A stretch of DNA of 64,000 bases, from NCBI GenBank assembly GCA_965637545.1, contig OZ281500.1, forward strand, positions 19,530,001 to 19,594,000, given 5' to 3'. Both the position numbers and the translations under genes were made by a program. How positions within the stretch are numbered: position 1 is the stretch's first letter; every line of letters begins with the position of its first letter. The notes beneath the pieces are model-generated. The model saw nothing but the letters and a program-made list of their open reading frames with translations. It was not told where the DNA came from and did no database searches. This DNA is from Phallusia mammillata. Its lineage: Eukaryota. Of the stretch, positions 29,264-31,376 are shown one piece after another.

Positions 29264-29817
29264 AAGCTTTATCTGTTTTCCTTAGCTGAAAAATGGCTGG
29301 TGCAGGATTCTATTACAAAGCAAAGAATCCTGATTGTGTGTGTTTCCCATGCTCTGATTCTCGCTACGCGCCTAATGATTAGTTGTTGTTTCGTGTCATG
29401 CGATGCTATTCTATATATCGTGCAATACATACTTTACACATGGAAATTTCCTATGATTCAGAAATTAGCGGAGTCGATTCCGTACTCGATCGGTTCTTGG
29501 CAACGTTGTGTTTTGGTTCTATTTACAGCAAATTAAGTCCTCGGTGCTGCACCAATTTCGACTGAACATTGTGTAGTAATATACTGGAGTTGACTACTTT
29601 ATAAACAAAACTATTGGACGCTGAAAAGGAATTTGGCCTGGTATACTTTTGTATTGTCTGAATCTAGGTGCATTTCGGCCAAATACATTTTAACAATTTT
29701 TCTTGAACAGCTTTACGTTTTAAGAACGTTTGACTCATTGTTTAGCATAGCCTAAAATAAACTAAAGCTGCAAACTAGGTAAGGCATTGTAAAAGCATAT
29801 AGAGCCAATAAATGATA

Positions 29818-29869
29818 AGCTGCAGACAGTGCACACTGTTTCGACCTATAAGGTCTCATCAGTGCAGCT
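29818..29869 (-). ncRNA. Type I hammerhead ribozyme (minus strand)
   Basis: RNA AGCUGCA-CUGAUGA-GACCU(UAU)AGGUC-GAA-ACAGU(GUGC)ACUGU-C^UGCAGCU: full conserved core, three helices, GUC cleavage triplet; predicted cut between 29825 and 29824. Confidence 0.9.
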
Positions 29870-30260
29870 GGTGACGAGAGATCGGCCGCATTGGCTAGTG
29901 TAGCCATTCAACGGCACTCCAGTTTGTTGGGAGCACAGGGTACAACCCCATGCATCACCTAGTCTGTGCGATGCCACAACTGGACATACAGCACAGATGA
30001 AACTGGCTCACAATGGCCAAACAACTGCTTGGGAACCACAGTGAAGTCGGCTCAGTGTCACAGTATCAATGTAAAAGCATATAGAGCCAATAAATGATAA
30101 GCTGCAGTTGGCCATTGTGAGCCAGTTTCATCTGTGCTGTATGTCCAGTTGTGGCATCGCACAGACTAGGTGATGCATGGGGTTGTACCCTGTGCTCCCA
30201 ACAAACTGGAGTGCCGTTGAATGGCTACACTAGCCAATGCGGCCGATCTCTCGTCACCAG

Positions 30261-30308
30261 CTGCACTGATGAGACCTTATAGGTCGAAACAGTGTGCACT
30301 GTCTGCAG
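30261..30308 (+). ncRNA. Type I hammerhead ribozyme (plus strand, inverted copy)
   Basis: CUGCA-CUGAUGA-GACCUUAUAGGUC-GAA-ACAGUGUGCACUGU-C^UGCAG; predicted cut after 30303; stem I is 5 bp. Confidence 0.88.
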
Positions 30309-31376
30309 GTAAGGCATTCTACTACGAAAACCACTGCGCCTAAGGTGCAAAGTTTTTTGCAAAGATATTGTATTTTTACCAACAATAAGACTATAGCGGG
30401 GATGCCTGAAGTGCTGATGCTACAGTTTTGAATTGTTCGGGGTGTAAGCATTTGTATCTTGGTTTTGGCACCCGTAAACGAATAAAAATGAATGAATTTG
30501 ATCTCTTGTCAACGCTGTTACACTTACAAAATTCAGTCCACTTATTTACCATGTTGGTTTTTGCTTAAGTTTCATTCCAAACTGGACTGCTTTTGGAGCG
30601 GTATGTTGTCTGTAGTCCTCAAGTAGTACAAATCCTTCAATGCGGTTTCAAAAAGTATGACGTCATAAAAGAAACTTCCAGAATGTCAAGCATCGTTTGT
30701 TTGCTTCAAAGTGTACAGTTGCAAAGGCTGAATGTTGTAATTTTTTTAGTTGTTTTCGAACTACAAAATCAGCAATTTAGGCAAAGTTTTCAGCATTGTA
30801 GGACAAGTAATTCAATGTGTAATATTGCTTTCCTTACGAGTGGCCTGGAAGAAACAACTCCACTTCAAAAGAAATTCAAAGGTAAAAATGGTTAACTTGA
30901 AGTTGCAGTATATTATATAAGGGTCTGTACGGTGTTGAATGTATCGCTGTCGCCTATATGTCCTTCAGCGATAGTATTGGCATTTTGTTCTGTATATTTA
31001 GAAACTTGTTTGATCATGTTAATCGTGATTTGTCTGTGGTGGTCACGTTTGATAATGTCTTGCCAAACTATTTCCAGTTGCGTGCAAGTTCTTAATGGAC
31101 CAGCATTTGGCGAACTTTGGATTCAAAACTGTGCGATTCGTTTCTAAACGAGTATTTCCAGTCGAAAGTTGGAAAATCATTTTAATTATGTTTGTGATCA
31201 GGCAATGTATCTCTGACATGTCAGTATTAACTGAAACTTCCATTTTTATGCCCAGCGAGTCGGTTTGTCGGGAAAATAAACACAGTACTGTACAGCAAAA
31301 ACATAAAAATAACACTTTGCTATGGGGAACACATCGCGTCTCTAGTCGTTCTTCAACGGCAGTAAACACTGCTGAC

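What the first reader, a model, noticed from the sequence alone, without database searches (positions are those of the whole stretch)
29777..30318. Recently inserted hammerhead-ribozyme retroelement whose 282-nt unit runs from cleavage site to cleavage site (candidate circular-RNA retrozyme)
Seen: an intact type I hammerhead (CUGAUGA/GAAA core, GUC triplet, three stems). A ~37-bp direct repeat with period 282 nt ends within 1 nt of the predicted cleavage position (30107 vs 29825). A 10-12-bp TSD brackets the insertion and there is no credible ORF. Established: type I hammerheads occur in Penelope-like element pLTRs and in short non-coding metazoan retrozymes that produce monomeric circular RNAs, and Penelope insertions often carry an inverted truncated 5' copy. 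Inference: a self-cleaved or circular 282-nt RNA was reverse transcribed for slightly more than one unit, stopped at the ribozyme-generated 5' end and template-switched to make the inverted arm. Identical arms and an intact TSD imply a very young, possibly active family that may be undescribed in this lineage.
Basis: partly seen in the sequence, partly recalled or inferred. Interest (0 to 1): 0.85.

Follow-up and report, generated by a model that had tools for sequence, protein, structure and literature searches.

The report
Young hammerhead retrozyme insertion, Penelope-style
This is a recent, still polymorphic 518-bp insertion of a small non-coding jumping element that carries a self-cutting hammerhead RNA; its two head-to-head copies and one-sided "tail" are the known scars of Penelope-type retrotransposition, so it is a new family of a known kind rather than a new kind of element.

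Summary
Window 29789-30306 is a 518-bp insertion flanked by a 12-bp target duplication (AGGTAAGGCATT). It holds one full 282-nt unit plus a 36-nt tail on the minus strand, and a perfect 201-nt inverted arm on the plus strand. Each arm carries a canonical type I hammerhead. A contig from an independent public run joins 29776 directly to 30307, which is the empty allele, so the insertion is real, exactly bounded and polymorphic.

The unit belongs to a very young family: 291 exact hammerhead 43-mers in the genome and about 0.7% divergence from the consensus. Copies are dispersed, carry TSDs and are 5'-truncated, or sit in arrays of up to about 5 units.

Across 102 arms, insertions follow strict rules. 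The two 3' ends face outward. One ends about 9 nt past the ribozyme cut and the other about 38 nt past it. This is the published Penelope-like-element signature. 5' ends are mostly scattered, but they are enriched at the cut, which is a footprint of self-cleavage in vivo.

It is a retrozyme, but the 37-bp repeat is the PLE "tail", not evidence for a circle. Circular RNA, expression and the helper PLE remain untested. This scan had already met the same 282-nt family on other DNA of this genome. Verdict: new member of a known kind.

The parts
29777..29788 (.). Target-site duplication, left copy (AGGTAAGGCATT)
   Evidence: Direct repeat D3. The empty-allele contig in run X4 joins 29776 to 30307 and so holds one copy only.
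29789..29824 (-). Long tail: unit positions 1-36, repeated downstream of the ribozyme cut. This is the 3' end of the full-length arm.
   Evidence: Direct repeat with spacing 282. 51 of 102 family arms end at +31..+53, with the mode at +37/+38.
29825..30106 (-). One complete 282-nt unit. Position 1 is U at 30106 and position 282 is C at 29825.
   Evidence: 99-100% identical to many genomic copies, and tandem arrays have a period of exactly 282. The only private variant is at unit position 86 (window 30021, A where the family has G).
29818..29869 (-). Type I hammerhead ribozyme. The predicted cut lies between 29825 (C17) and 29824.
   Evidence: Rfam RF00163, 22.8 bits. Three-helix minimum-energy fold. 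The exact 43-mer occurs at 291 genomic sites.
30107..30107 (-). Inner junction base. It is either C282 of an upstream unit or one untemplated nucleotide. The full-length arm's 5' end sits at the cut, plus or minus 1 nt.
   Evidence: The sequence reads CTGCAG|TTGGCC. Exact-extension analysis places this arm's 5' end at position 282.
30108..30306 (+). Inverted 5'-truncated arm: unit positions 87-282 plus a short tail of 3 nt. The tail could be 5 nt, because the next two bases (AG) are shared with the TSD.
   Evidence: Inverted repeat I1, 201 nt, 100%. 43 of 102 family arms end with a short tail at +4..+14.
30259..30308 (+). Second hammerhead copy, in the inverted arm. The predicted cut lies between 30303 and 30304. 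Helix I is shortened to about 5 bp by the insertion end.
   Evidence: Mirror of the minus-strand motif.
30307..30318 (.). Target-site duplication, right copy

Best explanation
The stretch is one young, polymorphic insertion of a non-autonomous, non-coding 282-nt hammerhead retroelement. It belongs to the metazoan non-LTR retrozyme kind and was integrated by the reverse transcriptase/GIY-YIG endonuclease of a resident Penelope-like element (PLE).

Shown here:
- The element was inserted into a 12-bp staggered target.
- It consists of two sense copies facing outward. One runs from the ribozyme cut through a full unit to +36. The other runs from unit position 87 to +3/5.
- Dozens of other insertions of the family obey the same rules.

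Inferred mechanism:
1. Unit RNA is transcribed from tandem or read-through copies, and part of it is cut by the hammerhead.
2. The PLE enzyme nicks both DNA strands 8-12 bp apart.
3. One DNA 3' end primes cDNA about 38 nt downstream of the cut. The other primes about 9 nt downstream of it, on a second copy of the template.
4. Each cDNA runs until the RT falls off or reaches a cleaved 5' end. At this locus the first cDNA ran to the cut.
5. The two cDNAs are then joined head to head.

Both priming sites lie beyond the cut. The template must therefore span it, either as an uncleaved multimer or as a religated circle. Which of the two was used is not known.
For: Insertion and its age:
- Anatomy and TSD are set out.
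- Run X4 holds the empty allele in one contig. In run X2 the contigs break exactly at 29788 and 30307.

Family size and youth:
- 124 scored matches out of 2319 candidates, many at 99-100% identity.
- 99 copies of the 30-mer that starts the unit.
- 291 exact hammerhead 43-mers.
- 0.73% mean divergence from the consensus.

Insertion rules:
- 3' ends are bimodal, 43 short and 51 long out of 102 arms.
- 34 of 36 two-armed insertions have exactly one long and one short tail.
- TSDs were found at 39 of the 63 arm clusters the script scored; most of those without one are single arms or run into an assembly gap or a locus end.
- Opposite-strand hammerhead neighbours are arranged (-,+) 18 times and (+,-) once.

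Published PLE signature: partial tandems, an inverted 5'-truncated copy and a 30-40-bp tail at one end only (Craig et al. 2021, PMC8557442).

Resident PLEs:
- They are abundant, with open frames up to 845 aa.
- One lineage shows the same behaviour of having or lacking a 38-nt tail.

5' ends at the cut:
- 8 arms end at C282/U1, against 10 arms over the 21 positions upstream of it.
- L047, L048 and L050 are TSD-flanked insertions of positions 1-35, 1-37 and 1-41 only.

Class: non-LTR retrozymes of 170-400 nt with type I hammerheads are described in Cervera & de la Pena 2020 (PMC7229834) and Li et al. 2026.
Against: - No RNA evidence. All available runs are contigs, the runs labelled RNA are only guessed to be RNA, and one of them also covers the flanks faintly.
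- Self-cleavage was not assayed, and the Rfam score is below the gathering threshold.
- No helper was identified. The 3' regions of the two PLE lineages I could read share nothing with the unit.
- Three of the eight 5' ends at the cut involve the CTGCAG palindrome or an internal deletion, and could be microhomology effects.
Confidence: 0.85

Rival explanations
1. It is not a separate non-autonomous family but a solo or partial pseudo-LTR of an autonomous PLE whose ORF has been lost at this locus.
For: PLE pLTRs carry hammerheads and give the same tandem and inverted structures. PLEs are abundant in this genome. Li et al. 2026 relate retrozymes to pLTRs.
Against: - Arrays repeat with a period of exactly 282 nt and hold no ORF.
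- No family site lies within 10 kb of a PLE ORF hit. The one exception is an independent TSD-flanked insertion in L033.
- The PLE lineages I read carry different, minimal hammerheads and unrelated 3' regions.
Confidence: 0.05
2. It is a SINE-like element mobilised by a LINE or another reverse transcriptase, not by a PLE. The inverted arm would come from L1-type twin priming.
For: It has a variable-length TSD, 5' truncation and no coding capacity.
Against: - There is no poly(A) or microsatellite tail.
- Both outer ends are 3' ends of overlapping copies, unlike twin-priming inversions.
- The strict rule of one long and one short tail matches the PLE description.
- A resident PLE shows the same tail dimorphism.
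Confidence: 0.06
3. It is a hammerhead-bearing satellite or foldback DNA element that spreads by DNA-level mechanisms, and the flanking repeat is coincidental.
For: The family forms short tandem arrays with exact unit junctions. The locus is a long perfect hairpin.
Against: - An empty allele carries a single TSD copy.
- TSDs of variable length occur at most insertions.
- Inner junctions are variable, and insertions as short as 35-45 nt exist.
- The largest arrays seen hold only about 5 units.
Confidence: 0.03
4. It is an assembly artefact, a foldback chimera in the reference.
For: Perfect inverted repeats can arise from chimeric long reads. No contig I saw crosses the inner junction at 30107/30108.
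Against: Contigs of an independent run (X2) break exactly at both outer boundaries, while X4 holds the empty site. The same architecture recurs at dozens of loci.
Confidence: 0.01

Closest known systems
Metazoan non-LTR retrozymes (Cervera & de la Pena 2020, NAR, PMC7229834)
   Same: - A non-coding unit of 170-400 nt; this one is 282 nt.
- A type I hammerhead, tandem copies, and TSDs longer than 4 bp.
- A self-paired unit RNA: the circular fold gives z = -3.0 with 66% of bases paired.
- Autonomous PLEs carrying minimal hammerheads coexist in the same genome.
   Different: - The host is an ascidian according to earlier notes of this scan; I did not check the species. No retrozyme paper I found mentions tunicates.
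- Helix III is long (5 bp), so the ribozyme should act as a monomer.
- Most copies here are dispersed, 5'-truncated two-armed insertions rather than long arrays.
- Linear and circular RNAs, which define the published families experimentally, were not tested here.
Penelope-like element insertions (Evgen'ev & Arkhipova 2005; Craig et al. 2021, PMC8557442)
   Same: Partial tandems, an adjacent inverted 5'-truncated copy, a 30-40-bp tail at one end only, a TSD, and a hammerhead near the repeat end.
   Different: - There is no RT/EN ORF.
- The unit is only 282 nt.
- The hammerhead is canonical with a stable helix III, whereas the resident PLEs I read carry minimal motifs with a 1-bp helix III.
Plant LTR retrozymes (Cervera et al. 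2016, PMC4918200)
   Same: Non-autonomous, hammerhead-bearing, and proposed to move through unit-length RNA.
   Different: The plant elements carry type III hammerheads inside LTRs, have a PBS and PPT, make 4-bp TSDs, and use Ty3/Gypsy machinery. None of this is seen here.
Newt satellite 2 / Schistosoma Sm-alpha hammerhead repeats
   Same: Short repeats carrying type I hammerheads that are transcribed and self-cut.
   Different: Those hammerheads have a weak helix III and work as dimers. Newt satellite 2 forms large arrays, whereas this family is dispersed, has TSDs, and includes a demonstrably polymorphic insertion.

Membership tests
Hammerhead ribozyme, type I | Conserved core CUGANGA...GAAA, an A15.1-U16.1 pair and a cleavage triplet GUH | tested here: met
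   The sequence has CUGAUGA, GAA, A-U and GUC in the right order and spacing.
Hammerhead ribozyme, type I | Three helices around the core, with helix I open-ended | tested here: met
   The minimum-energy fold of 29810-29880 (minus strand) gives helix I 7 bp, helix II 5 bp and helix III 5 bp, with helix I closed only by the rest of the unit.
Hammerhead ribozyme, type I | Score at or above Rfam's gathering threshold for RF00163 | tested here: not met
   22.8 bits against 34, and no match at E<=0.5 in the whole-window search. The shortfall comes from the 8-nt longer helix III, not from any core mismatch.
Hammerhead ribozyme, type I | Self-cleavage activity | not testable with these tools
   Indirect only: 5' ends of genomic copies are enriched at the predicted cut.
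Metazoan non-LTR retrozyme | Short (about 170-400 nt) non-coding unit with a type I hammerhead, occurring in tandem copies | tested here: met
   The unit is 282 nt, and arrays of up to about 5 units have a period of exactly 282. No ORF longer than 65 aa is present.
Metazoan non-LTR retrozyme | Retrotransposed copies with TSDs and no LTR, PBS or PPT | tested here: met
   TSDs occur at 39 of the 63 arm clusters scored. An empty allele exists for this locus.
Metazoan non-LTR retrozyme | Low GC content (under 45-50%) | tested here: inconclusive
   The unit is 49.3% GC, against 37.8% for the window.
Metazoan non-LTR retrozyme | Expressed as unit-length linear and circular RNAs | not testable with these tools
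   Only Logan contigs were available. Runs guessed to be RNA hold element contigs but cannot show ends, strand or circles.
PLE-mobilised (non-autonomous Penelope-like) element | Adjacent inverted 5'-truncated copy, so that both outer ends are 3' ends | tested here: met
   Seen at this locus. Family-wide, opposite-strand neighbours are (-,+) 18 times and (+,-) once, and 36 two-armed insertions were found.
PLE-mobilised (non-autonomous Penelope-like) element | Tail extension of 30-40 bp at one end only | tested here: met
   Here the long tail is +36 and the short tail +3/5. 34 of 36 two-armed insertions have one of each. The tail proper, between the two ends, is about 28 nt.
PLE-mobilised (non-autonomous Penelope-like) element | An autonomous PLE in the same genome that shares the element's 3' end or hammerhead | tested here: inconclusive
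   PLEs with long open frames are present. Two lineages that I read share nothing with the unit. A third lineage could not be fetched.

The most novel reading that the evidence does not exclude
The family acts as a natural reporter of how Penelope enzymes integrate RNA.

- Every insertion starts cDNA at two fixed sites, about +9 and about +38 after the hammerhead cut. These sites sit at the two sides of a small predicted hairpin (unit positions 8-12 paired with 39-43).
- Minimal insertions of 35-45 nt begin exactly at the cut.

If this reading holds, the first 40 nt after the ribozyme cut would be the minimal cis signal for PLE reverse transcription, and the ribozyme would define the template's 5' end in vivo. 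Neither point has been shown for any PLE or retrozyme.
Probability: 0.25. Interest if true: 0.6.

Novelty: new member of a known kind. Interest (0 to 1): 0.4.

Why it matters
Animal retrozymes are thought to be mobilised by Penelope-like elements, mainly because the two occur together and because pLTRs resemble retrozymes. Here the insertion scars themselves carry the PLE signature: outward-facing arms and a tail at one end only. An empty allele shows that the family moved recently. The excess of 5' ends at the ribozyme cut is a genomic footprint of self-cleavage in vivo. Together these make a young, homogeneous family in a laboratory ascidian a convenient system for testing PLE integration and retrozyme circle formation. 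This extends known biology and is not a new principle.

Tried and rejected
- **Rfam on the whole window:** it gave only a spurious MIR841 match on the hairpin at 29952-30175 (82 bits against a gathering score of 200). I rejected it as an effect of any long perfect hairpin.
- **Hammerhead in L033 near a PLE ORF:** it proved to be an independent, TSD-flanked 282-family insertion, not the PLE's own ribozyme.
- **Shared 3' tag with a helper:** the UUUUAC motif also occurs after the cut in PLE lineage c. That element's homology runs on to about +107, so the motif is not its terminus, and I dropped the lead.
- **Private variants shared between the two arms of one insertion:** too few variants to decide, with 5 shared out of 49. 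The identical arms at this locus therefore say little on their own, because the family is so uniform.
- **Rolling-circle test on arrays:** the L016 units share private variants but the L010 units do not, so the result is inconclusive.
- **Fetching more genomic copies and the third PLE lineage:** I did not try to get round this.
- **Depth in the DNA runs as a copy number:** not used, because contig depths are summed.
- **Covariation analysis of the hammerhead:** not possible, because no diverged but intact relatives were found in the loci I held.

Full report
**1. The observation**

- A perfect 201-nt inverted repeat, 29820-30020 against 30108-30308.
- A 41-nt direct repeat with spacing 282, 29785-29825 against 30067-30107. 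It has one mismatch, which lies in the flank.
- A 12-bp direct repeat, AGGTAAGGCATT, at 29777-29788 and 30307-30318.

Rfam's type I hammerhead model matches 29819-29868 on the minus strand at 22.8 bits (E 0.035 in 4 kb). This is under the gathering score of 34, and the match disappears at E<=0.5 when the whole window is searched. The low score reflects a helix III that is 8 nt longer than the model expects, not a defective core. The RNA reads AGCUGCA-CUGAUGA-GACCU(UAU)AGGUC-GAA-ACAGU(GUGC)ACUGU-C^UGCAGCU, and the minimum-energy fold is the three-way junction. The predicted cut falls between minus-strand C (29825) and U (29824), so the direct repeat ends on C17. No ORF above 65 aa overlaps the element.

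**2. It is a real, exactly bounded and polymorphic insertion**

Public runs of the same organism were available only as contigs. In run X4 (a different study, 2018) one 1148-nt contig lies on 29600-29776 and continues without a break on 30307-30476 (table 8, record 17). That is the empty site carrying a single copy of the 12-bp target. In run X2 the flanking contigs stop at 29788 and start at 30307, as expected where unique sequence meets a high-copy repeat. The insertion is therefore 518 bp plus a 12-bp TSD. It is present in the reference and consistent with X2, and it is absent from the X4 contig. No contig I saw crosses the inner junction at 30107/30108.

**3. The family**

I define the unit in RNA sense from U1 (window 30106) to C282 (29825).
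- A search of the window's own 240-Mb genome gave 124 scored matches out of 2319 first-look candidates. Many were 99-100% identical, and some formed tandem arrays with a period of exactly 282.
- The first 30 nt of the unit occur 99 times at two mismatches or fewer, against 0 in the reversed control.
- The exact 43-nt hammerhead occurs 291 times, against 0 in the control.
- Mean divergence of copies from the family consensus is 0.73%.
- This locus differs from the consensus at one base only, unit position 86 (window 30021).

**4. Anatomy of insertions**

I mapped 102 arms in 63 distinct loci.

3' ends fall into two classes.
- 43 arms end with a short tail 4-14 nt past the cut. The mode is +9/+10, ...GUC^UGCAGCUUA.
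- 51 arms end with a long tail at +31 to +53. The mode is +37/+38, ...GCUUUUACAU.
- Of 36 two-armed insertions, 34 have exactly one tail of each class, and none has two long tails.

The arms face outward. Among neighbouring opposite-strand hammerheads, 18 pairs are (-,+) and one is (+,-).

Flanking duplications of an apparent 9-15 nt were found at 39 of the 63 arm clusters the script scored. Most of the clusters without one are single arms or run into an assembly gap or the end of a locus. These lengths include microhomology with the element ends.

This locus fits the pattern. Its long-tail arm is on the minus strand (unit positions 1-282 plus 36) and its short-tail arm is on the plus strand (positions 87-282 plus 3 to 5).

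[quoted passage not shown] 2021, PMC8557442).

**5. Does the cleavage site matter?**

5' ends are mostly scattered, as expected for 5' truncation, with many between positions 195 and 260. However, 8 arms end at C282/U1, against 10 arms spread over the 21 positions 261-281. That is about eight-fold above the local density (Poisson p about 7e-6). If I drop the three cases that involve the CTGCAG palindrome or an internal deletion, 5 remain (p about 0.003).

The clearest cases are L047, L048 and L050. These are TSD-flanked insertions holding only unit positions 1-35, 1-37 and 1-41. L048 and L050 start directly at U1, and L047 starts at U1 after three extra bases. They are what a cDNA primed at about +38 on an RNA whose 5' end is the ribozyme cut would look like.

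Most arms, however, read through the cut or stop elsewhere. A second small cluster of 5' ends lies at positions 267-271, inside helix III.

**6. What the template was**

Both priming sites lie downstream of the cut, so the template must span the site. It could be an uncleaved multimer or a religated circle. At this locus the template had a free 5' end at one cut and an intact site 282 nt further on. That fits a partly processed multimer and not a 282-nt circle.

Arrays inside single insertions have exact unit junctions with no extra bases. This argues for continuous templates rather than end-to-end jumps between linear monomers. The four units of L016 share two private variants, which is compatible with rolling-circle copying of one monomer. 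The units of L010 differ from one another. The data do not decide between circles and multimers.

The unit RNA is more self-paired than shuffled controls. As a linear molecule z = -2.7. As a circle the fold is -97.8 kcal/mol with 66% of bases paired and z = -3.0. Immediately after the cut the fold predicts a small hairpin, positions 8-12 paired with 39-43. The two priming sites sit at its two sides. This is an observation only, and the stem is weak.

**7. RNA evidence**

There is none that counts. Small runs guessed to be RNA, from three studies, hold the element's words, and two of them that I laid yielded contigs of it. One of those also covers the flanks faintly, and contigs cannot show ends, strand or circles. 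Expression and circular RNA remain untested.

**8. Helper**

The genome holds many PLE copies. A 301-aa RT-thumb/GIY-YIG query gave 133 scored matches out of 985 candidates. They form a group at 84-100% identity, with open frames up to 845 aa, and a large group at 35-40% identity with many open frames of 750-820 aa.

I could read two lineages. Lineage a (L032-L035) and lineage c (L031, L077) both carry minimal hammerheads with a 1-bp helix III just downstream of the ORF. Neither 3' region resembles the 282-nt unit.

Lineage a shows the same tail dimorphism. Homology among its copies ends 84 nt after its cut in two copies and 38 nt further on in two others.

No 282-family site lies within 10 kb of a PLE ORF hit, apart from one independent insertion in L033. 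This argues against the unit being a PLE pLTR.

**9. Comparison with what is known**

The element meets the sequence-level definition of metazoan non-LTR retrozymes (Cervera & de la Pena 2020, PMC7229834). A 2026 preprint argues that these are non-autonomous PLE derivatives in vertebrates (Li, Clavereau & Pollet).

Neither paper mentions tunicates. A search for retrozyme together with tunicate terms listed no retrozyme paper among its top results, and a search for Penelope with Phallusia found nothing. The only ascidian paper mentioning hammerheads lists 9 Rfam hits in Didemnum.

Earlier notes of this scan call the genome the ascidian Phallusia mammillata. I did not verify the species. Those notes also show that the scan had already met this same 282-nt family elsewhere in the genome and reached the same class (s1-395743, s1-405485).

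**10. Verdict**

This is a new member of a known kind. What this analysis adds:
- the empty allele;
- the strict rule of +9 and +38 ends, with one tail per insertion;
- the excess of 5' ends at the ribozyme cut.

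Noticed in passing
window 29952-30175: Rfam reports a MIR841 microRNA-precursor match (82 bits against a gathering score of 200, E 1e-15). It is simply the long perfect hairpin of the two retrozyme arms, so it is a false lead for annotation pipelines.
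   Followed up: yes
L032-L035 (G000 C1:4030545-4033652, C1:4270906-4274013, C5:22713047-22716289, C3:12268530-12271637): A resident Penelope-like element lineage with a YVDD RT, a GIY-YIG EN and a minimal hammerhead (CUGAAGA...GAAAC-GUC^AGCAAAAA). Two copies end 84 nt after the cut and two carry a further 38-nt tail.
   Followed up: partly
L031 and L077:3-1100 (G000 C1:26849681-26852911; C6:8970930-8972030): A second, divergent PLE lineage, about 27-30% identical in RT/EN to the first. It has its own minimal hammerhead (CUGAUGA...GAAAC-GUY^UGUUU), and homology between the two copies ends about 107 nt after the cut.
   Followed up: partly
G000 C2:24755260-24761305 and many other places: A third, abundant PLE group, 35-40% identical to the first, with many open frames of 750-820 aa and tandem copies every 2.6 kb. 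It could not be fetched, and it is the untested candidate helper.
   Followed up: no
runs X18 and X19: Two runs filed under a second species label ('organism B') hold about 47% of the sampled 31-mers, which corresponds to the element itself at near identity. This could be a sister species sharing the young family or a labelling issue.
   Followed up: no
L056-L059 (G000 C3:4160269-4164298, 4234742-4238771, 4551383-4555412, 5087996-5092025): Four loci carry the same retrozyme insertion with the same flanks, including an older element copy 1.6 kb away. They are segmental duplicates made after the insertion.
   Followed up: partly
L055:1993-2209 (G000 C2:30408656-30408872): One copy lacks the ribozyme from the CUGAUGA core through C282 (unit positions 245-282). 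The deletion joins the helix I 5' strand to the next unit's start through the CAGCUGCA/UGCAGC microhomology. It looks like a template jump across the base of the hammerhead.
   Followed up: partly
window 29668: The empty-allele contig of run X4 carries A where the reference has G. This SNP is linked to the haplotype without the insertion, and it is also seen in X7.
   Followed up: no
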